DNA of 64,000 nt from Lepidodermella squamata (taxonomy: Eukaryota; Animalia; Gastrotricha): assembly GCA_047495785.1 (NCBI GenBank), contig JBLDXI010000017.1, positions 1,364,001 to 1,428,000 on the forward strand, written 5' to 3'. This document shows, piece by piece, positions 50,045 through 60,026 of this stretch. A model generated the notes under the pieces. That model worked only from the letters and a program-made list of their open reading frames with translations. It made no database searches and was not told where the DNA came from. The translations under genes were made by a program, and so were the position numbers. Numbering within the stretch: the stretch's first letter is position 1; each line of letters starts with the position of its first letter.

Positions 50045-53000
50045 ATGGCGGAAGTTGCAGCCAATGCGCAGCCCCAAAAGGCGTTTGATCCTGCTGGTAA
50101 GTCGTCAGCAGTATTTAAGTTACCGATAGCTTTATTCCTTTCTTTTTCAGATTTCCTCCCGATCGAAATTCCTCCTGCACCTGTCGGTTTAGGTGGAAAA
50201 GAAGGGCAGGGCCCTCGTCTAGTCATCAAATCATTGATTTTGGAAAACTTCAAGTCCTACGCCGGTAAGCACGAGATCGGCCCTTTCCACAAAAAGTTCT
50301 CCACCGTTGTCGGCCCGAATGGAAGTGGCAAATCGAACATTATCGATGCGCTACTATTCGTCTTCGGATACCGTGCAGCTCGTATGCGCCAGAAAAAAAT
50401 CAATAAGCTCATCCACAGCTCGGAGAATTGCCAAGACCTCGACCAAGCCTCTGTTACTGTCCGTTTCGAAAAAATCGTCGACACGGGCCCGGGCGGTAAT
50501 GACTTTACAGTTGTTCAGGGCTCGGCTTTCGACATTCGCCGCACTGTATACGCCGATGGCTCGTCAACTTACCATCTCGATGAAAAGAAAGCAACTCATC
50601 GCGATATCTGCGACATGTTACGCTCGTATGGCATCGATTTAGACCACAATCGCTTCCTCATTCTTCAGGGCGAGGTCGAGCAGATCGCGATGATGAAGCC
50701 GAAAGCGCCTACTGAAAACGACGATGGAATGCTGGAATTTCTCGAAGATATCATCGGAACCTCGCGGTTTAAATCAGTTCTAGAGACGCTGGAAGAACGA
50801 ATTCGTGTCCTCAATCACTTCCGCTCGGAAAAATTGTACCGCGTCAAGTTGATTGAACAGGAGAAGAATTCGTTAGCAGCTGTTAAAGATGAAGCTTTAG
50901 AGTGGATTGAGAAAAGCAACACTCTGGTTTTACGCCGCAACGCTCACCTCCAGAAAGTCATCCAACGCTACACGCATGAAGAAAACCAGCTTAACCAGCA
51001 GAAAGAAACGATTGTGAACTCGAAGCAAGCTCGTGAAACCGAGCTGAAAAAGGTGAAAACTGAAAAGAAGGAAAAAGATCGTCTGTTGGCCGAGTTCGTT
51101 AGTCGTGAGGAAACTTTACGAAAAGCTCTTGAAGCTCGTAAGAAGCAATTTGCTGATTGCGAGGCTCGCGACGCTAAATTGCAGCAAGACATCAAACACG
51201 CAAGTTCAAAAATCTTGAAGCTTGAAAAGCAACTCGCGTCTGAGGAGAAAAATCTCGCCGATCTCAACAAAGCCGCTGCCTCGAAATCAGCGAGCGATCC
51301 TAAAGATGCTGAGGCCGCGCTGAAGGAAGAAATCTCGAAGATTCAACAGAAAATTAAAGCTCTCGACGAGGAGAAGAACGAATTGGAGGAAAAAATCTCG
51401 AAGGCCCGCGACGCTTTGAAGCCTGAAACCGAAGCCCTACGAGCTGAGAAGAAGAAAAAAGACGGCGAGTTGGCTAAAGTTCGTAAATTGGCCGACGAAG
51501 CGAAAGCTCAGGTGAAACTGGCGCAGAATGAGGTTGATACAGTTAAATCAGCTCAATCTCGCGAGTCGGAGAAACTGAGCAAAATCGCCGGGCAACTTGA
51601 ATCGGCGAAAAATCGCCACGAAGAACTGAAGCGTGACGTTGCGTCGGCGACAGCTCGCGGTAAAGAAATAACGAAGGAACACGAAAATTTGACGCAAGAG
51701 ATTGCACAAGCTGCGGAAAAAGCGTCAAAACTAGTAGATTCAATCAACCAAGACCGGCGAAAATTGGCCGAATGTCGAGATGCGCAACAAGCAGCTGGTA
51801 CTCGCAATCGCGTTCTCGGTTTCTTACTCGAGCAAAAGCAGAAGGGTGTCGTGCCGGGTGTTATCGGGCGACTGGGTGATTTAGGCTGGATTGATCCGAA
51901 ATACGACATTGCCGTTTCAACCGCTTGCAGCCCTCTCGACTCAATCGTCGTAGATACAGTTGAAACCGCAACGGCTTGCATTGATTTGATCCGGAAAAAC
52001 AACATTGGTTTCGGTAATTTCCTCGCCCTGGATAAGGTGACTAACAAGGCTGGTCAAGCGATGCGCCACAAATTCCCTGGCGCGCCTGAGAAAGTCCCTC
52101 GGCTGTTCGATTTGATCAAAGTTAACGATGAATCTCTCCTCCCGGTTTTCTACCACGGTCTTCGCGATACGTTGGTTGCGGATAATATCGAACAGGCCAC
52201 CCGAGTTGCGTACGGCAGTACGCGTTACCGTGTTGTCACCCTGAATGGGCAGTTGATCGAAACCTCCGGAACAATGAGCGGTGGCGGTAATCGGCCATCG
52301 CGAGGCCGGATGGCGCTGTCAGAGGCTAACACGGTTTCGACTAATAAACGGAAATCAGTTGGCGGGGATGATGTCGACATTCCGAAAATCGAACAGGCGA
52401 TTCAAGCCGCTCAGAACGAGGTGGGCACTTTAAATCGGCGCCGTCTGGAAGGCACCGAGCGAATTCATACGTTGGAGGTTGAGATCAAGGAATGCATGAA
52501 GAAGGTCGAGAAGGCCAAGTCTGAACTCGCGTCTTTGGAGAAATCCATCCCGCAACTCGAGCAGAACGCCCAGGAACAGGAGAAGACTGTCTCAGCCGCT
52601 GCCCCGGATTCGAAACGAGTCGCTGAGCTCGAGGCGGTTGTTGCGAAGAAGCAAAAAGAGGCTGATAAAGCCCTGGATGTTGTGAAAAAGGCTCAGGAGG
52701 AACTGGCCGAGGTTGAAGAACGTCTCGGGGCGATTAGTGGCGCTAAGTTGAAGCCAATGGTCGATAGAATGGAGCATTGCCAGTCGGAGATCGATCGTTT
52801 GAAGAATGAAATCACGACGAAACGATCAGCGGCGAAACAAGCGGAGAAAAATTTGCAAAGAACTACTGAACGAGTGGCGGAATTGCGCGAGCAGTTGGAC
52901 GAAGCTCGGGAGTCGAAGGCGAAATTGCTGGAAGATTGCAAGGCGCTGGAGACTGAAGCTCAAGAGGCGATTAATGCCCACGACGAGGTGAAGAAGGATT

Positions 53001-54583
53001 TGAAGAAAATCGACGCTGATAAGGGGGACGTGTCTGATGCGTTCAAAAAATTGGCGGCTGATGAGACGTCGGCACAAAAGGACATTTTAGGCTGGCAACA
53101 GCAGTTGGAAGAGCTTGAGGAGCGAATCAAGGCGAATCGATCTGGGTTGAAGCGATTCCGGCGTGATTTGGCTGGTTTGGCGTTGCAACCGGCCGATGGT
53201 GGTACGGGAGGCGATGAGGAAAAAGAAGCCGTAGATGAACCTAAATTGCCGACTTTGAGTGAAGATCAGCTCGAGGAGATCGATGAAGAGGCTATTTCGG
53301 TCGAAATCGCGAGGTTGGAAGAAGAAATTGGCCAGAAACAGCCGAATATCGAAGCTATTCAAGAATACCGTAGAAAAGTGAGTTTATTCAATATATTTTC
53401 TTAGTGAAACCACCGAATCCAAAATACAGGCTAAAAATTGCTGAAGCACGCGACTGGGCTGATTTTCTATCATCTTGGCATGTTATTTATTGAAAATTGG
53501 AATAACCGGGAAAATGAGGCTCGGCCTAAGCTAAGATGCTGGAAAATCTATCGAATCGCTTGCTTTTAGTATAGAAAATAGCGTTATTGTGGATTCGGCT
53601 TTTCCACTAAGTTCCATTAGAAAATTTGATTTTAAAATAAAATATAAAATATAAAAAAATATGTAATATTTAAAATAATTTTTACAGGAAAAACTGTATT
53701 TGCAACGGGTGGCTGAACTCGAGGAGTTGACCGAGTGCCGTGAGAAGCAGCGCCAACAGCTTGAAACCATCCGCCGTACCCGCTTGCAAGAGTTCCAAAG
53801 CGGTTTCGGTATAATTACTGCCCACGTTCGAGAAATCTATCACATGATCACCGGTGGTGGTGATGCCGAACTTGAATCTGTCGATCAGATGGACCCGTTC
53901 AGCGACGGCATCTCTTTCCAGTAAGATTTTCAGTTAATTCCAGAATTTAAGATCTTTCTTGTTATTTTGACTAAAAATAACGTTTTAACAACAACACTAC
54001 AAGCTACAAGCTAGAAATGATAAAATTTGAATTTTATTGCAATTATTTTTATTATTTTGAAATTTTAAAATAATATTTTATAAAAATTAAAAAAATCAAA
54101 ATTGTTTTTTAAATATTTTAATTATTTTCATACTCAATTTTACGATCATTTACTAATCGAATTTTCTTTTTCAGCGTCCGCCCTCCAAATAAATCGTGGA
54201 AAAGCATCACAAATTTGTCTGGCGGTGAGAAGACATTAAGCTCCCTGGCCCTCATTTTCGCGCTGCACATTTTCCGCCCGGCGCCGTTCTACATAATGGA
54301 CGAAATCGACGCGGCCCTCGATGCTCGCAACGTTGGCATCATCGCCATCTACCTGACTGAGCGGACGAGCAACGCGCAGTTCATCGTTATCTCGCTGCGT
54401 AATGAAATGTTCGAACTCGCCGACCGTATGATCGGCATCTACAAGACGCACAACTGTTCGAAATTCGTCGTTTTCGACCCGTCCGCCATGGCAGCGGCCG
54501 CCGGCGCCCTGCCCAGCCAAATGCAGCAGCAAGCCGCGATCACCGACGGCCCTGTCGACGATTCGCAGCGCACTCATCGCTGA
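50045..54583 (+). CDS. SMC4: Condensin subunit SMC4; exons 50045-50096, 50151-53377, 53688-53920, 54175-54583
   Basis: NFKSYAG, Walker A GPNGSGKS, IDLDHNRFLILQGEVEQIAMMKPK, hinge GRLGDLG..YDIAVSTAC, signature LSGGEKTLSSLAL, Walker B YIMDEIDAALD, AQFIVISLRNEMFE. Confidence 0.97.
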
Positions 54584-54913
54584 ATTTTTTCAATTTTGTG
54601 ACTTTTATCGCGTTAATTTTAGTCAATTATCTCGGTACTCTTATTCTGTAACTGCATTTCATCGCAACTTTTCATCATTATAGCTACGCATGCCGAAAAA
54701 TGAAATAAAAAACGACGCATTTTTAAACGTGATTTTTTTATTGGCCGGATGATATAGTAGTGCATCGAGTAATAGTTTACAATTTCAACAGCCAGATATT
54801 ATTTTAATTACTATGGAAGAAATAATAATGAAATAATTACACATCGATTTTTAACGTGTTGTGCGACACAAATTTAACAGCCATTATATCAGTCAATATT
54901 GAGCGGTAGAAAA

Positions 54914-57900
54914 CTATGAAATGGCCAAAAATTTGTCGGCAAGAACTTCGCCGATATCCGGACGCTCGTCTGGGTGATTCGTCAGGAGATTCTCAACAAA
55001 ATGACGCAGCGAATCGCCATAAGGCATTTTCGACGGAAATTGGACCCTAATTAAAAAAATAAATAAAAATTCCTCCTTAAAAAAATAAAATTCTCACTTT
55101 GTGCGTTTCGGCTTGAATAAATTTTCATCGCCCTCATCAAACTGTTTTAAAATATTTTGAAAAGAAATCGAAAATCAAAAATTTCCTAACCGGTGGTCTA
55201 GAGAATGCAAGCTGGTAGGTCAAAGCGCCTAGAGCCCAAATATCGGCTTTGCGCGAATAGGGTTGGTGATCGATAATTTCGGGCGCAATGTGAGCGCCCT
55301 TTCGGCGCAAGGCGACAACTTGGCGGTACTTGTCGATCTTGTGGATCGTCCCAATCTGGCCCAGCTTAACGTGCTTGTTGTTGTCGACAACTAGAATGTT
55401 CTTGGCTTTGATGTTGCGGTGCACGATGCCGTTTTCGTGAAGAAATTTCACCGCCGAAGATAGCTGCCATATCCAAGAACGAATCTGGGGAAAAATAAAA
55501 ATTTGAATTTCTTTCGAAAAAATTTAGGTCATACAGTTGCTTCAGGTAGGTTCAATCTCTCCTTTCGATTTTTCGAAATAAGCTTCGACAAATCGCCACC
55601 AGAACAAAACTCCATCTCGATAATAAGCTTATCATGTTCTAAATCGAAAATCAATTCATAAAACCAGATTGAAAATATTGGGATTTTTTACCTTCGAAAA
55701 CTTTGAAAAACTGAACAACATGAGCGTGGCTGTATTTCGCGTTAACGAGAGATGTTGCTTCGTGAATGACACTTCGCCGCTCGACTGAGTTCATCCGAGC
55801 GAGGGAGACCTCCTTCAAAACAACTTGAGTTTTGTCGATAGGTCTGCGGGCAAGGAGAGCGCGGCTGAAATAGCCCTGGCTGATAATCCGAATTCCTTCG
55901 TATTGATCACTAAGACGAACAAAGATAAATGGAAAATTTCTAAAAATCAAGATTAATTACCATGACACGTCCAGAGCACTCGTTGATGGCTTCCGAAATT
56001 CGATCAGCGGCAACGATTCAGACAATTGATTATCGCAATTTTGCAGAACCGAACAAGAGATAGAAGCCGACTTTTGAGACGCCACCTTAAAACAATAAGT
56101 AATTATCGTAAAATTCACAATTTCTCCATTCTTACTCGATAGGCTTTAGCCGCGACATCGGAAAGATGGCGTTTGCTCACATTTCCAACAGCGTTCCAAT
56201 CAACAACATCAATGCCGTCGTACTTTGACCCAGTTGAAACAGCCATGAAGACTTTGCTACCTTGCGCCAAAGGAATTCGAGCAAGCTAAAAAAAAATCCA
56301 TCAATATCTCAATAATTCTCTAAATTTCATATGCAAACCTGTTCAATGTACTGGAAAACTTGTTGCGGAATTTCCTCATGAAGGATCGACAGAACGTGAA
56401 GTCCAAGCGCGAAATAGCCATTGATCAACCGCTGTCGAGATTCAGAAATCTCCGAACCAGGCGTGTTGACAACAATTCGTTCCAGCTGAATGATAACACG
56501 TTGGAACATATCAATAGGCTTGCACTCTTCCAGAACGAGATGATGGTCATCGGACTTGAATGCGAAAATCAAATTGACACAGCTTTTATAGATGTGAAAA
56601 GCTGAAACATTAAAAATTAATTCATATTTTTTTTATGAATTAAATTAGCATACTATCAGCGCAAAAAGGGTCCGGATTCAGGAGATGAATATCAATGGCG
56701 TGTAGGCACAGTCGGAAACAGGTGTTGTACTGGCGTAATTTTCCGAAATGAACCGCCACCTCACGCACGCTGTTGTACGTAAACGGGTGCTCCAGGCCAA
56801 GAATTCGCTCGCAAATCTAAAAAAAAATTGAGCGCCAACTTTTAGTAAACAAATAGCAATAATTGCGTCATCAAGTTCACGTGACAGTCTGAGTAATTTT
56901 TCCAGGTCATTCAGGGCAATAAAATGCCTGGTTTTAATGAAATTTATTAAACCAATTATTTACCAGAAGTGCAGTGAAATGAACTTTAGTAGTGTCGCTG
57001 CGAATGGCGCTCAGCTCTTTCGAGTTGCGATATTCAGTCAAGTTGTTGTAGACAGTTCGCGGCTCTACATCGTTCAACTTTTTGTTGTAACGCGATAGAA
57101 GCGACTGTCGCAAAGCCACCGCTGAATACCAGCAATCGAGCCCGTTCTTGACATTCGACGGCGTTGATCGGGACAGCGTTCGAGGTCGCATTTCAATCAC
57201 TGAGCCCGAGTTCTTTTTATCCTTATCCCGGCCGGAGCAGATTTTTTTCGCACCCAGCAACTCAAGAGCATCGGCTGCTTTGTCCTTCGACAGGCCCTTC
57301 GACAACAATTTAACGGCCTCGTCATGTTCGTACATGGCTGCGACTAGTACCGGGGTGATACCGGCATTGTTCGGTTTTTGAGTCGCGCCATAGGCAAGCA
57401 GTAGCTTCAAAATTTTCGTATTTCCATTTTCGGCTGCATCGTGAAGACAGGTATGGCCTGAGCAAAAAAATTGATAAAAAATTAAGTAAAACAAAAATAA
57501 AAATGTCCAACCATCCAAGCTCGCCTGATCGACCTTGGCCCTTCTCTCAAGAAGGTACTCGACGATTTCATAGTGGCCACGAGCACAAGCGACCATAAGC
57601 GGGGTGCTGCGGCAGACATTTCCAAGTTCCAGATCGGCGCCTTTTTCCACCAAAAATTTGAGAAGTTCCACGTGGCCCCCGTGGCAACAAGCTCGTAAGG
57701 GTGAAGACAGGGTCTTCTTGGTTCGGATATTGACATTAGCGCCGAATCTGATGAGAAATTTAGCTAGGGGGATGTTGTTCTTCTGACAAGCTAGCCACAA
57801 AGGCGGCACTCCTTCGATGAGATGATCGTTGATTTTCACTAACAAATTACAAATTACAAATTTTGCGAAATTTTCTAAAATTTGCTCACCATCCCCGAGT

Positions 57901-58193
57901 TGATCGTAATCAGCTCCGCATTGAAGAATTAAAAATTCGACGATATCAAGATATCCCTTATCACAGGCAGTTAAAAGCAGCGTTGTTTTAACGCCTAGAA
58001 AAATGCGAAAAATCAGCACATTTTTCGGAAAATTTTCGAAATTTTTACCATCCGCATTAACTCTTGTCGTGTTGACAAGGAGGCTTCGTTTGAGAAGTTC
58101 GCGTAACGAGCTGGTATTTTCGAAGAGATCTCGGACCTGCGTGAGTTGGTTGTTGCCAACCCATTCGAATAGTATTTCCAGGAAGGTTGACAT
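54914..58193 (-). CDS. Fem-1-like ankyrin/TPR protein fused to a NEK-like pseudokinase (854 aa); exons 58193-58049, 57994-57890, 57838-57512, 57457-56964, 56816-56654, 56601-56339, 56285-56136, 56085-55961, 55909-55692, 55638-55535, 55484-55191, 55141-55098, 55046-54914
   Basis: Fem-1 hallmarks IEGVPPLWLAC, NVNIRTKKTLSSPLRACC, KADALELLGA, ALLICERILGLEHP; kinase-fold motifs VVLKEV, EMEFCSGGDL, HRNIKAKN, APE, KADIWALG, PDERP. Thirteen exons total 2565 nt with no stop. Confidence 0.8.
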
Positions 58194-60026
58194 TAATTAG
58201 TAATTCAGCTTGTTTCTTCGCTGTGGGCAATCAATGCAATGATTTTTCGAAGCGTTGACTTTTTCCGTATTTTCATAAACCGTTTGCCGATAAATTTATC
58301 GAAATGCCGGTGTGAAGCCAGAATAGCAGGAGTTTCAGTTAATTTCTCCACGAGTGATTGTTAAACTCGAAAAAGTGATGCTAAAAAAAACAAAAGTTAT
58401 GTCCAAAATCAGCTAACATAGAAGTTGAACTTTGTATCATATAGTTGAGCGAGCCAAAAAGCTTAGAGAGAGAGGAATAGAGAGACCGAAGAGCACGTGC
58501 TTGTACAGCTGCGGATGAAAAGAGATCAAGTGGTGAAAAAAGCATCACGGCGGGCAGAGAAGAACGCTACGTGAGCTCATCTTGATGCACGAAATCTGTT
58601 GCCGGCCGCCCGCTCGAAGTAATAAAATTACAGTTATTTTTCTCGCCCCTTTTGAACATTGTTATTAACCAAGGCAACAATAATTATTTTAATGACCAGG
58701 TAGTTGAATGCTCTGTCTTGTATATAAATAAAAGGCTTTCCACTACCAGCTTTCAACTTGACCTAGTTCAAGTGGTAAAATTATTATACCATACTGTCGG
58801 CGAGACTAGCCGATTTTATTGCCATTGAACAACGCACTCGATGACCGACTGTCTGCTGTCGAAGAATAAGCCAAGTCTCGACGACTTGGTGGCGCCACTT
58901 TCGGGCCAGACTATAATGAGTGCATTTGTCGCGGTCATTCGAGTACTTCCATCTTTAGCATAAAAAATTAAACTAGCTGTACAAACATCTGAGACAAAGA
59001 AATGAATGAAATCGTCCAGGGTTCACGTGTTCCTGACTGATTTCAATGAATTAATGAAATAATAAAATAATAATAATTAATTAATTAAAAAATAAAAACG
59101 TCAAGTATATTTTCCATTTCAATCTGGACCGGAGCCAATTTCATGATAGCAGAATGCGCATGACAGCTGATGCGCTTTTCTTATATCGCATCGCGTTCGA
59201 ACGCGTCTAAAATTCAATAATTAAGAAATCATGAAAAAATGTATGAGATGAATGCAGGCTATGAATTTGAGGCTATAATAATATGGGATTACTCTAGGGC
59301 TAGCCGATCCCATTCCCACATGCGCACAATTAGTGGCCAATTTTTGGGGCGTTAAAGAGGCATAAAGCACAAAAAAATTAAATAAAAATTCCACCTTAAA
59401 AAATTGCACTCACAAATTCTGCTGTGCATGTGTGGGAATAAAAGTGCTTGGCGTCAGTGAAATAAAATAACAATATAAAGTATAAAGTAATAATAATAAG
59501 GAAAGGTGAAACAAAAGTACCATGAGATCTTAGATGAATTGTATCAAGGCGGATGCCTTCTTTTCTGATCGTAAATTGCTCTCTACACAGTCGGTGCACG
59601 TTAGCGAGAGCGCAACATTTCACGCCTTGATTTTTTCAGCGCGCGTGTATCGCGTGGAAAAAATAGCAGCTTCCTGTTTGTCTTCTCCTGGTTTTTTCCT
59701 AGTCAATAAAGAATCTACGACCTTTGCACACATGATTCATGACACGCACAAAAGTCGCAATTCTTTTCAGTTGATGAGCAGCACACGCCTCTAAATCTCG
59801 AATCGAGTTCACGGATATGTGTACGGTGTGCGGGTTACATTAAACCGAAAGAAACCTTAACTTTTGGCATGAACATGTCGAAGTTATTATTAGATTGTGG
59901 TGCCTGATTGTGGCATTTCTTGGACCAGTCTTGATATTATCAACTTTTATTTAAAAAAAATAGGGCGAAAATTGCGAAATTGAAGTAAATCAGCTCACCG
60001 CATGCCGAGATGAATCACCGATAATT

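What the first reader, a model, noticed from the sequence alone, without database searches (positions are those of the whole stretch)
54914..58193. Fem-1 substrate receptor fused in frame to a catalytically dead NEK-like kinase
Seen: the Fem-1-like and kinase ORFs join through ordinary ~50-nt GT-AG introns via two linker exons (56285-56136, 56085-55961) with matching phases, no stop and no separate kinase ATG. The kinase has HRN for HRD, QIG for DFG and a degenerate Gly loop (ISQGYFS), but keeps the VxxK lysine, APE and DIW. Known: Fem-1 proteins are CUL2-Elongin BC receptors whose N-terminal ankyrins bind C-degrons and whose C-terminal region recruits the ligase. Inference: the C-terminal ankyrins and ligase-binding box appear to be replaced by a pseudokinase. 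That could make a degron-binding decoy or scaffold linking degron recognition to NEK (cilia/cell-cycle) signalling. I know of no described protein with this architecture.
Basis: partly seen in the sequence, partly recalled or inferred. Interest (0 to 1): 0.85.

Follow-up and report, generated by a model that had tools for sequence, protein, structure and literature searches.

The report
FEM1-like protein fused to dead kinase
This is a real, transcribed and conserved animal gene in which most of a FEM1 ubiquitin-ligase receptor is joined to a catalytically dead NEK-like kinase domain in place of the part that normally docks onto the ligase, an architecture I found nowhere else but whose function is still only inferred.

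Summary

Spliced contigs of a public run bridge 11 of the 12 junctions. These include FEM1-part to linker exon E7, and linker exon E8 to the kinase. Only E7/E8 is unbridged.

Two related loci close that gap. In metagenome contig L001 one uninterrupted 402-codon ORF runs from the FEM1 helical region through both linker equivalents into the kinase.

Of 37 coding differences between the window and the public contigs, 36 are synonymous. This includes six in the linker exons.

The N-half is a FEM1 paralogue. FEM1 homology is significant to about FEM1 residue 375 by sequence and extends to about FEM1B residue 528 by fold. The second C-terminal ankyrin repeat and the VHL box are not detected. The two aspartates that bind the C-terminal arginine degron are replaced in all three relatives. 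A canonical FEM1 exists elsewhere in the genome.

The kinase is NEK-like and lacks the HRD and DFG aspartates.

The most likely role is a ligase-uncoupled scaffold, which is inference. Novelty: a new variant of known kinds, with moderate interest.

The parts
54914..58193 (-). Whole coding region of the 13-exon gene (ATG 58193-58191, TAG 54916-54914), 854 codons
   Evidence: Model rebuilt. X1 contigs show 11 of 12 junctions. 36 of 37 coding differences are synonymous.
58194..58360 (-). 5' untranslated region, at least to 58360
   Evidence: X1 contig record 6 covers 58048-58360 without a break. An in-frame stop lies directly upstream of the ATG.
57285..57994 (-). FEM1-type N-terminal ankyrin repeats (exons E2, E3 and the start of E4, with two introns)
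   Evidence: Pfam Ank E=1e-23 for E3 and 7e-9 for E4. The FEM1 profile matches E2-E4 at positions 42-261, with E3 at 1e-35. FEM1 family hits have E about 1e-40.
57828..57830 (-). Asn at the position of FEM1C Asp77, which contacts the arginine degron
   Evidence: Alignment A2, coordinate check, role of Asp77 from PMC10026218.
57678..57683 (-). His-Gly at the positions of FEM1C Phe125-Asp126
   Evidence: Alignment A2 shows the same HG in the window, L001 and L016. Coordinate check. Role of Asp126 from PMC10026218.
56339..57284 (-). FEM1-type helical/TPR middle region (rest of E4, E5, E6, with two introns)
   Evidence: The FEM1 profile matches E4 and E5 at positions 264-375, with E5 at 3e-5. E6 gives only a weak colinear match, but its fold matches FEM1B from residue 377 on.
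56136..56285 (-). Linker exon E7: conserved helices equivalent to the first C-terminal ankyrin repeat region of FEM1
   Evidence: 52-66% identical to L001 and L016, with an invariant GIDVVDWNAVG. It is contiguous with E6 in L001 and L016. The E6/E7 junction is present in an X1 contig. The model superposes on FEM1B up to residue 528 with Z 11.6.
55961..56085 (-). Linker exon E8: predicted disordered linker carrying the conserved motifs CSVLQNCDN (56055-56029) and LSESLP (56025-56008)
   Evidence: 60% identical to L016, which has an intron at the same place. It is contiguous with E7 and with the kinase in L001. The E8/E9 junction is in X1 contig record 2, whose alignment ends exactly at 56085. 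The L001 equivalent has pLDDT below 50. Two synonymous differences fall here.
54917..55909 (-). NEK-like pseudokinase domain (exons E9-E13, with four introns)
   Evidence: Pfam Pkinase E=3e-23 for E11 and 8e-5 for E9. The L001 orthologue matches NEK1 best at 7e-21. The top 31 Foldseek hits are NEK7 or NEK2.
55413..55421 (-). HRN in place of HRD (catalytic aspartate lost)
   Evidence: L001 has HKN at this position.
55350..55358 (-). QIG in place of DFG (metal-binding aspartate lost)
   Evidence: L001 has AIR at this position.
55864..55884 (-). Degenerate glycine-rich loop ISQGYFS
54737..54742 (-). AATAAA, the likely polyadenylation signal, about 170 nt after the stop
   Evidence: An X1 contig covers the 3' UTR down to 54763.

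Best explanation
Shown: 58193-54914 (minus strand) is a single transcribed gene under purifying selection. It encodes an 854-residue protein made of three parts.
1. A FEM1-derived body: the N-terminal ankyrin repeats, the helical/TPR middle and the first C-terminal ankyrin region, equivalent to about FEM1B residue 528.
2. A linker of about 40 residues, predicted disordered, carrying a conserved short motif.
3. A NEK-derived kinase domain that has lost the catalytic aspartate (HRN) and the metal-binding aspartate (QIG).

The gene is a lineage-restricted paralogue. The same genome keeps a canonical FEM1 with the acidic pocket, the C-terminal ankyrins and a BC box. Two relatives from environmental or public runs share the fused layout.

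Inferred: the last part of FEM1, which docks onto Elongin B/C-CUL2, is not detectable, and the two aspartates that read a C-terminal arginine are replaced. The protein most likely no longer works as a CRL2 receptor for Arg/C-degrons. It more likely acts as a non-catalytic scaffold. In this reading, the remodelled FEM1 groove binds some other peptide ligand, and the pseudokinase domain serves as a docking or allosteric module for a partner, plausibly an active kinase of the NEK-like family that is greatly expanded in this genome. Neither ligand nor partner is known.
For: One gene:
- A single open frame runs through 13 exons, and it depends on both linker exons.
- Spliced X1 contigs show 11 of 12 junctions, including E6/E7 and E8/E9. 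The E8 alignment ends exactly at the acceptor 56085.
- In L001 one stop-free 402-codon ORF covers the E6, E7, E8 and kinase equivalents.
- L016 has E6-E7 contiguous and an intron at the same E7/E8 position.
- L001 is syntenic, with the SMC gene convergent downstream in both.

Selection: 36 synonymous against 1 non-synonymous difference. Four of these fall in E7, two in E8 and fourteen in the kinase exons.

FEM1 ancestry: E about 1e-40 to FEM1A/C and CG6966. Profile matches cover E2-E5. The E6-E7 model matches FEM1B 377-528 with Z 11.6 over 142 residues, against 8.4 for the next hit.

Loss of the ligase anchor: E7, E8 and everything after them give no match to FEM1 positions beyond about 460 by profile. 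The FEM1B BC box is at 597-608 and the cullin box at 617-627 (PMC10943247). The FEM1C VHL box is at 580-617 (PMC12580893).

Pocket change: D77N and F125H/D126G. The canonical paralogue on contig C28 keeps FD and YD plus a BC-box-like RLSCLAARVV.

Pseudokinase: HRN/QIG in the window and HKN/AIR in L001, which also has Gln for the beta3 lysine. The fold is predicted with confidence, with mean pLDDT 85.8.

NEK affinity. Own-genome kinase exons are 56-58% identical to the start of E11.
Against: - No transcript contig bridges E7/E8 in this species.
- The absence of a VHL box rests on failed sequence similarity in a fast-evolving region. The linker carries a conserved motif ([ST]-V-L-x-[ND]-C-[DG]-N, then LS..LP) that loosely resembles a BC box followed by a Pro-containing box. 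Residual Elongin C binding is therefore not excluded.
- The FEM1B structural match (Z 11.6) lies below the level at which helical repeats are safe from chance resemblance. It rests on a model built from only four sequences.
- The kinase alignment used for folding consisted of NEK-like hits, so the NEK-like model leans on them.
- No binding partner, ligand or phenotype is known.
- Some pseudokinases with unusual motifs retain activity.
- X1 contigs over E5-E13 carry about three times the depth of those over E1-E4. This could mean 3' bias or an additional shorter transcript.
Confidence: 0.55

Rival explanations
1. It is still a CUL2-Elongin B/C substrate receptor. The conserved motif in the disordered linker (E8) is a diverged BC box/cullin box. 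The pseudokinase is an added C-terminal module that recruits substrates or regulates the ligase.
For: A conserved short motif lies in an otherwise poorly conserved linker: window S-V-L-Q-N-C-D-N-Q-L, L016 S-V-L-S-N-C-G-N, L001 T-V-L-R-D-C-D-N. It is followed by LSESLP or LSTTLP. The window version fits [STP]-hydrophobic-x3-C-x3-L if Val replaces the canonical Leu. The FEM1 body up to the first C-terminal ankyrin repeat, which also touches CUL2 in FEM1B (PMC10943247), is kept.
Against: There is no profile or pairwise similarity to the FEM1 C-terminus. The key BC-box Leu is Val. The L001 and L016 versions miss the last hydrophobic position. The spacing from the motif to the LP differs by 9 residues between the window and L001. 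The segment is predicted disordered. I could not test binding, because the search for Elongin C in the genome returned only Skp1 genes.
Confidence: 0.15
2. It is a decoy for canonical FEM1. It binds the same C-degrons but cannot recruit the ligase, and so protects FEM1 substrates.
For: The FEM1-type groove architecture is kept and the VHL box is not detectable. A canonical FEM1 is present in the same genome.
Against: The residues that hold the C-terminal arginine are replaced (D77N, D126G, F125H), and so is the NRHGH stretch. These replacements are conserved across the relatives, which points to a different ligand and not to decay (PMC10026218).
Confidence: 0.1
3. The kinase domain is an atypical but active kinase. 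The protein would then be a FEM1-targeted kinase and not a scaffold.
For: The window copy keeps the beta3 Lys, the alphaC Glu, HxN, the catalytic-loop Asn, APE and the subdomain IX and XI residues. The fold is predicted with confidence.
Against: Both the catalytic base and the DFG aspartate are missing in both available orthologues. The Gly-rich loop has one Gly. The beta3 Lys is Gln in L001. Catalysis would therefore have to be non-canonical and not conserved.
Confidence: 0.05
4. There are two adjacent genes, or non-joined transcripts. The FEM1-like mRNA would end in or after E7 and the kinase would be expressed separately. The fused ORF would then be a prediction artefact.
For: E7/E8 is the one junction without a bridging contig. 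X1 contig 3 stops at 56179, next to a possible in-frame donor GTGAGC at 56180. Depth differs between the 5' and 3' halves.
Against: E6/E7 and E8/E9 are spliced in RNA. E8 has no in-frame ATG, and a separate kinase would have to start after beta3. E7 and E8 are under purifying selection in the model's frame. In L001 the whole stretch is one uninterrupted ORF. The last 15 residues of E7 are conserved in all three relatives.
Confidence: 0.04

Closest known systems
FEM1A/FEM1B/FEM1C (fem-1, CG6966): substrate receptors of CUL2-Elongin B/C ligases
   Same: The N-terminal ankyrin repeats, the helical/TPR middle and the first C-terminal ankyrin region are homologous or structurally equivalent. Identity is 33-39% with E about 1e-40. 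Profile matches reach position 375, and the fold match reaches FEM1B residue 528.
   Different: No second C-terminal ankyrin repeat and no BC box or cullin box is detected. The Arg/C-degron aspartates 77 and 126 are replaced. A 264-residue pseudokinase is added at the C-terminus. The protein is a paralogue alongside a canonical FEM1 in the same genome.
NEK (NIMA-related) protein kinases, e.g. NEK1, NEK2, NEK7
   Same: They are the best sequence matches (NEK1 at 7e-21 for the L001 orthologue) and the best structural matches (top 31 Foldseek hits) of the kinase domain.
   Different: The catalytic Asp and the DFG Asp are lost and the Gly loop is degenerate. NEK signatures such as GTPYY.SPE are eroded. 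The domain lies at the C-terminus behind a FEM1 body, not at the N-terminus.
Integrin-linked kinase (ILK): N-terminal ankyrin repeats plus C-terminal pseudokinase scaffold (from general knowledge, not tested here)
   Same: The same logic: an ankyrin peptide-binding module followed by a pseudokinase that works as a docking platform.
   Different: The ancestry of both halves is unrelated. The ILK pseudokinase is TKL-like, and its ankyrins are not FEM1-type and have no TPR region.
Giardia Nek-like pseudokinases with ankyrin repeats, and the kinase-ankyrin gene families noted earlier in this same genome
   Same: NEK-like, often dead, kinase domains combined with ankyrin repeats as protein-interaction modules (PMC12538575; scan notes). 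The closest own-genome relatives of exon E11 are 56-58% identical kinase exons.
   Different: In those proteins the kinase is N-terminal and the ankyrin array is a generic, variable repeat run at the C-terminus. Here the ankyrins are a conserved single-copy FEM1 body placed N-terminally, and the gene is conserved and slowly evolving, not fast-turning-over.

Membership tests
FEM1 family | N-terminal ankyrin repeat domain homologous to FEM1 | tested here: met
   A FEM1 profile built from 12 animals matches E2-E4 at positions 42-261 (E3 at 1e-35). The top named hits are all FEM1 proteins.
FEM1 family | Helical/TPR middle region following the ankyrins | tested here: met
   E4 and E5 match profile positions 264-375, with E5 at 3e-5. 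The E6-E7 model aligns to FEM1B 377-528 with Z 11.6, rmsd 3.6 and 142 residues, as the top of 48,161 chains.
FEM1 family | Two C-terminal ankyrin repeats | tested here: not met
   Only the region equivalent to the first repeat (up to FEM1B 528) is present. Nothing matches FEM1B 546-588 (PMC10943247).
FEM1 family / CRL2 substrate receptors | C-terminal VHL box (BC box plus cullin box) that binds Elongin C and CUL2 | tested here: not met
   There is no sequence or profile similarity to FEM1 positions after about 460. The protein continues into a disordered linker and a kinase domain. A loose BC-box-like motif in E8 does not fit the consensus in all three relatives. Physical binding was not testable.
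FEM1 family | Acidic pocket residues that bind the C-terminal arginine (FEM1C Asp77, Asp126) | tested here: not met
   Asn and Gly occupy these positions in the window and in L001. Gly occupies position 126 in L016. The canonical paralogue of the same genome keeps both Asp. Residue roles are from PMC10026218.
NEK kinases | Protein kinase fold with closest similarity to NEK catalytic domains | tested here: met
   Pfam Pkinase. NEK1, NEK2 and NEK7 are the top PDB sequence hits for the L001 orthologue. NEK7 and NEK2 are the top 31 structural hits. For the window's exon E11 alone the ranking is ambiguous, with CaMK1, DCLK1 and NEK1 close together.
NEK kinases (as active enzymes) | Catalytic residues: beta3 Lys, HRD Asp, DFG Asp | tested here: not met
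   HRN and QIG in the window. HKN, AIR and Gln for the Lys in L001.
Pseudokinases (functional class) | Kinase fold lacking at least one of the Lys/Asp/Asp catalytic residues, yet conserved | tested here: met
   Two of the three residues are lost in the window and all three in L001. There are 13 synonymous differences against 1 non-synonymous in the kinase exons. The fold is predicted with confidence.

The most novel reading that the evidence does not exclude
A FEM1 peptide-reading module has been disconnected from the cullin ligase and hard-wired to a NEK-type pseudokinase. This would create a new kind of adaptor that reads a terminal or linear peptide signal and passes it to kinase signalling instead of to degradation. 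Alternatively, if the linker motif still binds Elongin C, it would be a CRL2 receptor with a built-in pseudokinase sensor.
Probability: 0.2. Interest if true: 0.7.

Novelty: new variant of a known kind. Interest (0 to 1): 0.55.

Why it matters
FEM1 proteins are textbook degron readers of CUL2 ligases, and pseudokinases are textbook scaffolds. A natural, conserved protein that keeps the FEM1 reader, drops the ligase anchor and gains a pseudokinase is a ready-made experiment on what the FEM1 groove can do outside a ligase. It also shows how degron readers can be re-used by domain shuffling.

It adds a slowly evolving, single-copy member to the many kinase-ankyrin combinations of this unidentified invertebrate genome. 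That may help to tell housekeeping from fast-evolving uses of that toolkit.

The practical value is limited until the organism and a binding partner are known.

Tried and rejected
- Rfam scan of the window: no match.
- hhalign of the L001 ORF alone, and of a four-row alignment of E6-E7, against a FEM1 alignment: only a weak colinear match (E 0.06-0.1).
- Foldseek of the E6-E8 model against the PDB: only designed helical repeats, E above 0.2. The exhaustive VIA-align search then found FEM1B.
- Search of 1.84 billion representative proteins with the L001 ORF: only its own fragment and one further fragment (P0156) cover the non-kinase part. No full-length fused protein is on record.
- Metagenome scans with E7 and E5 patterns: none, then one chance match (L024, containing a stop), which I rejected.
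- ESM Atlas feature search: no usable hit.
- Word-index search with the 128-residue E11 frame, hoping to fetch a transcript-derived fragment that would show the six unlaid letters upstream of E8: nothing.
- Papers on 'fem-1' plus 'pseudokinase', and on the sample accessions: nothing relevant.
- Elongin C for a complex prediction: the Skp1_POZ family search of the genome returned only two Skp1 genes, so no complex job was sent.
- An alignment that mixed short exon fragments with full kinases scattered the fragments. I replaced it with A5.
It was not sent to any search, fold or look-up tool. All searches used single exons, stop-free frames or the relatives' uninterrupted ORFs by reference. A whole-protein domain scan, fold and architecture search were therefore not done.
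Full report
**1. The observation**

- It has thirteen exons joined by GT..AG introns of 49-54 nt, plus one of 147 nt.
- They give 2565 nt with a single stop at the end, that is 854 codons.
- E8 is 125 nt long. It converts phase 0 at the end of E7 into the phase 2 that the first kinase exon needs. The kinase is therefore in frame only if both linker exons are used.
- All quoted motifs were checked by coordinate: ISQGYFS, VVLKE, HRN, QIG, APE and DIW.
- Pfam calls ankyrin repeats in E3 and E4 and a protein kinase domain in E9 and E11. It finds nothing in E5-E8.

**2. Is it one gene? Transcript evidence**

Two public runs hold this stretch. When laid on 54700-58400, X2 behaves as genomic DNA, with contigs running through introns. 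X1 behaves as RNA, with contigs skipping exactly the predicted introns.

X1 shows 11 of the 12 junctions. These include 56339|56285 (FEM1-like part into E7) and E8 into the first kinase exon. That last joint is reported as 55964|55910 with two substituted letters. Its E8 side is 122 letters long and ends exactly at the acceptor, 56085.

The E7/E8 junction (56136|56085) is the only one not bridged. One contig ends at 56179 inside E7. The next begins six unplaced letters upstream of E8. The depth arithmetic shows that no X1 contig was laid on 56086-56178.

**3. Is it one gene? Comparative evidence**

The 418-residue stop-free frame that happens to read through introns 1-3 found FEM1 proteins of many animals, and one close relative, P0001, at 46% identity.

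P0001 lies on a 17-kb metagenome contig, L001. Exon-by-exon tblastn and frame listing show the same gene there with fewer introns.
- The E1-E4 equivalents form one ORF.
- One uninterrupted 402-codon ORF (L001 10935-12140) runs from the E6 equivalent through E7 and a linker of the same length as E8. It continues into the kinase domain, past the DIW/ALG motif.
- The locus is syntenic. An SMC gene lies convergently downstream both in L001 and in the window (50120-54571).

A third relative, L016, is a 1.66-kb contig of another public run, found through P0156. It is closer to the window, at 55-78% identity. It has E6 and E7 contiguous, an intron at the same E7/E8 position, and an E8 that is 60% identical.

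Coding continuity across every junction of the model is therefore seen either in RNA of this species or in an unspliced ORF of a relative.

**4. Selection**

Of the 40 differences that the read-laying table lists between the window and the X1/X2 contigs, 37 are coding. Of those, 36 are synonymous.
- They include four in E7, two in E8 and thirteen in the kinase exons.
- The single non-synonymous change is in E13.
- Thirty-four further differences were not shown by the tool.

The frame of the model, linker included, is under strong purifying selection.

**5. The FEM1 half**

A profile of 12 animal FEM1 proteins matches E2-E5 colinearly at positions 42-375. E6 gives only a weak colinear match, and E7 and E8 give none.

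I folded the E6-E8 equivalent of L001, using the few relatives as the alignment. Mean pLDDT was 78, with the linker below 50.
- Foldseek found nothing.
- The exhaustive structural search put FEM1B, in the CUL2-Rbx1-EloBC-FEM1B complex, first of 48,161 chains. It scored Z 11.6 and rmsd 3.6 over 142 residues, aligning model 1-151 to FEM1B 377-528. The next hit scored 8.4.

For helical repeats such a Z is not proof by itself. However, the match continues exactly where the sequence homology stops.

In FEM1B the second C-terminal ankyrin region is at 546-588, the BC box at 597-608 and the cullin box at 617-627 (PMC10943247). In FEM1C the VHL box is at 580-617 (PMC12580893). The fusion protein thus keeps the FEM1 body up to the first C-terminal ankyrin repeat. 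The last ~100 residues are replaced by a linker and a kinase domain.

The alignment with canonical FEM1s shows a second change.
- FEM1C Asp77 and Asp126 bind the C-terminal arginine of the degron (PMC10026218). Here they are Asn and Gly.
- The neighbouring Phe125 is His, and the NRHGH stretch is changed.
- The substitutions are the same in L001. For 125/126 they are also the same in L016.
- They are therefore a conserved re-specification, not decay.

The genome (121 Mb in 151 contigs) carries the fusion once. It also has a canonical FEM1 on contig C28, which keeps both aspartates, the C-terminal ankyrins and a BC-box-like RLSCLAARVV.

**6. The kinase half**

The L001 orthologue matches NEK1 best among solved structures (7e-21), followed by NEK2 and NEK7. 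The next family is seven orders of magnitude weaker.

The AlphaFold model of the 402-residue ORF has mean pLDDT 85.8, and its best 31 structural matches are NEK7 or NEK2. The alignment used for folding consisted of NEK-like hits, so this second result is not independent. The window's exon E11 alone does not discriminate between kinase families.

Column by column against the NEK-like hits:

| Motif | NEK-like consensus | Window | L001 |
|---|---|---|---|
| Gly loop | G.GsFG | QGYFS | YGDFD |
| beta3 Lys | K | K | Q |
| HRD | HRD | HRN | HKN |
| DFG | DFG | QIG | AIR |

APE and the subdomain IX and XI residues are kept. This is a pseudokinase by the usual criteria, and ATP binding is not a conserved feature.

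Within the genome, the nearest kinase exons are 56-58% identical over the first 45 residues of E11 and carry intact HRD and DFG. Ordinary NEK-like genes are at 33-40%. Earlier notes of this scan describe large families of NEK-like kinases and HRN pseudokinases fused to ankyrin arrays in this genome. The kinase half was probably recruited from that pool, which is inference.

**7. The linker**

E8 and its equivalents are predicted disordered. They share a short motif, [ST]-V-L-x-[ND]-C-[DG]-N, followed by LS..LP.

The motif loosely recalls a BC box plus a proline-containing box, but several features count against that reading.
- The critical Leu is Val.
- The last hydrophobic position is missing in two of the three relatives.
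- The spacing from the motif to the LP varies.

I could not test Elongin C binding, because the genome search for its family found only Skp1 genes.

**8. What it most likely does**

Shown: one conserved, expressed gene encodes a FEM1 body without a recognisable ligase anchor, then a linker, then a NEK-like pseudokinase.

Inferred, at about 55%: it is a non-catalytic scaffold uncoupled from CUL2. Its remodelled groove binds a ligand other than an Arg/C-degron, and its pseudokinase docks a partner.

Rivals:

| Rival | Odds |
|---|---|
| Still a CRL2 receptor through the linker motif | ~15% |
| Decoy for FEM1 substrates (weakened by the pocket changes) | ~10% |
| Atypical active kinase | ~5% |
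| Two separate genes | ~4% |

**9. Organism and distribution**

An intronless HSP70 of the genome is 73-78% identical to those of molluscs, arthropods, tardigrades and flatworms, with no closer named relative. This points to an animal from a poorly sampled lineage.

Only three members of the fusion family were found. No paper links FEM1 with a pseudokinase. Ankyrin plus Nek-like pseudokinase proteins are known in Giardia, but in the opposite domain order and with generic repeats (PMC12538575).

**10. Verdict**

- Novelty: a new variant of known kinds, namely a new and conserved domain architecture built from two well-known families.
- Interest is moderate (0.55). The gene is real and unusual. 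However, domain shuffling of kinases and ankyrins is rife in this genome, the organism is unidentified, and the function is inferred only.

That step is left out and named under the next steps.

Noticed in passing
window 50120-54571 (+): A large SMC-family gene (56% identical over 1088 residues to the L001 ORF, plus two short 3' exons) lies convergently downstream of the fusion gene. The same arrangement is found in L001, which shows the two loci are orthologous.
   Followed up: partly
window 58048-57995, 57889-57839, 57511-57458: Introns 1-3 are 54, 51 and 54 nt long. All are multiples of three and free of stops, so a 420-codon frame reads straight through them. The E3/E4 intron of L016 (48 nt) is also in frame and stop-free. 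This may be chance or tolerance of intron retention.
   Followed up: no
window 56172-56189: A consensus-like donor GTGAGC at 56180 inside E7 would remove 15 codons in frame. An X1 contig ends at 56179. The 15 residues are conserved in both relatives, so the long form is the conserved one. Use of the short donor is untested.
   Followed up: partly
window 54700-58400 (X1 contig depths): X1 contigs over E5-E13 carry depths of about 130-180, against about 40-57 over E1-E4. The step falls at the only long intron (147 nt, 56963-56817). This could be 3' bias or a shorter transcript starting there. The tool warns that contig depth is a poor measure.
   Followed up: no
window 58360 (X1 loose end): Eleven loose letters beyond 58360 in an X1 contig equal the reverse complement of 58230-58220. 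This looks like a strand-switch artefact of assembly or cDNA synthesis rather than a spliced leader.
   Followed up: no
G000:C28:141366-145400 (L010, L020): This is the canonical FEM1 gene of the same genome. It has an intact acidic pocket (FD, YD, NRHGH), C-terminal ankyrins and a BC-box-like RLSCLAARVV.
   Followed up: partly
G000:C34:1185700-1186200 and G000:C10:1018400-1018830 (L026, L028): These kinase exons, with intact HRD and DFG, are 56-58% identical to the first 45 residues of exon E11. That is closer than ordinary NEK genes of the genome. They probably belong to the expanded kinase-ankyrin families noted earlier in this scan.
   Followed up: partly
L001 4550-8800: Upstream of the fusion orthologue, the metagenome contig carries another ankyrin-repeat ORF and several ORFs without Pfam matches, then PEX11 and PCMT genes. 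None of these is in the window.
   Followed up: no
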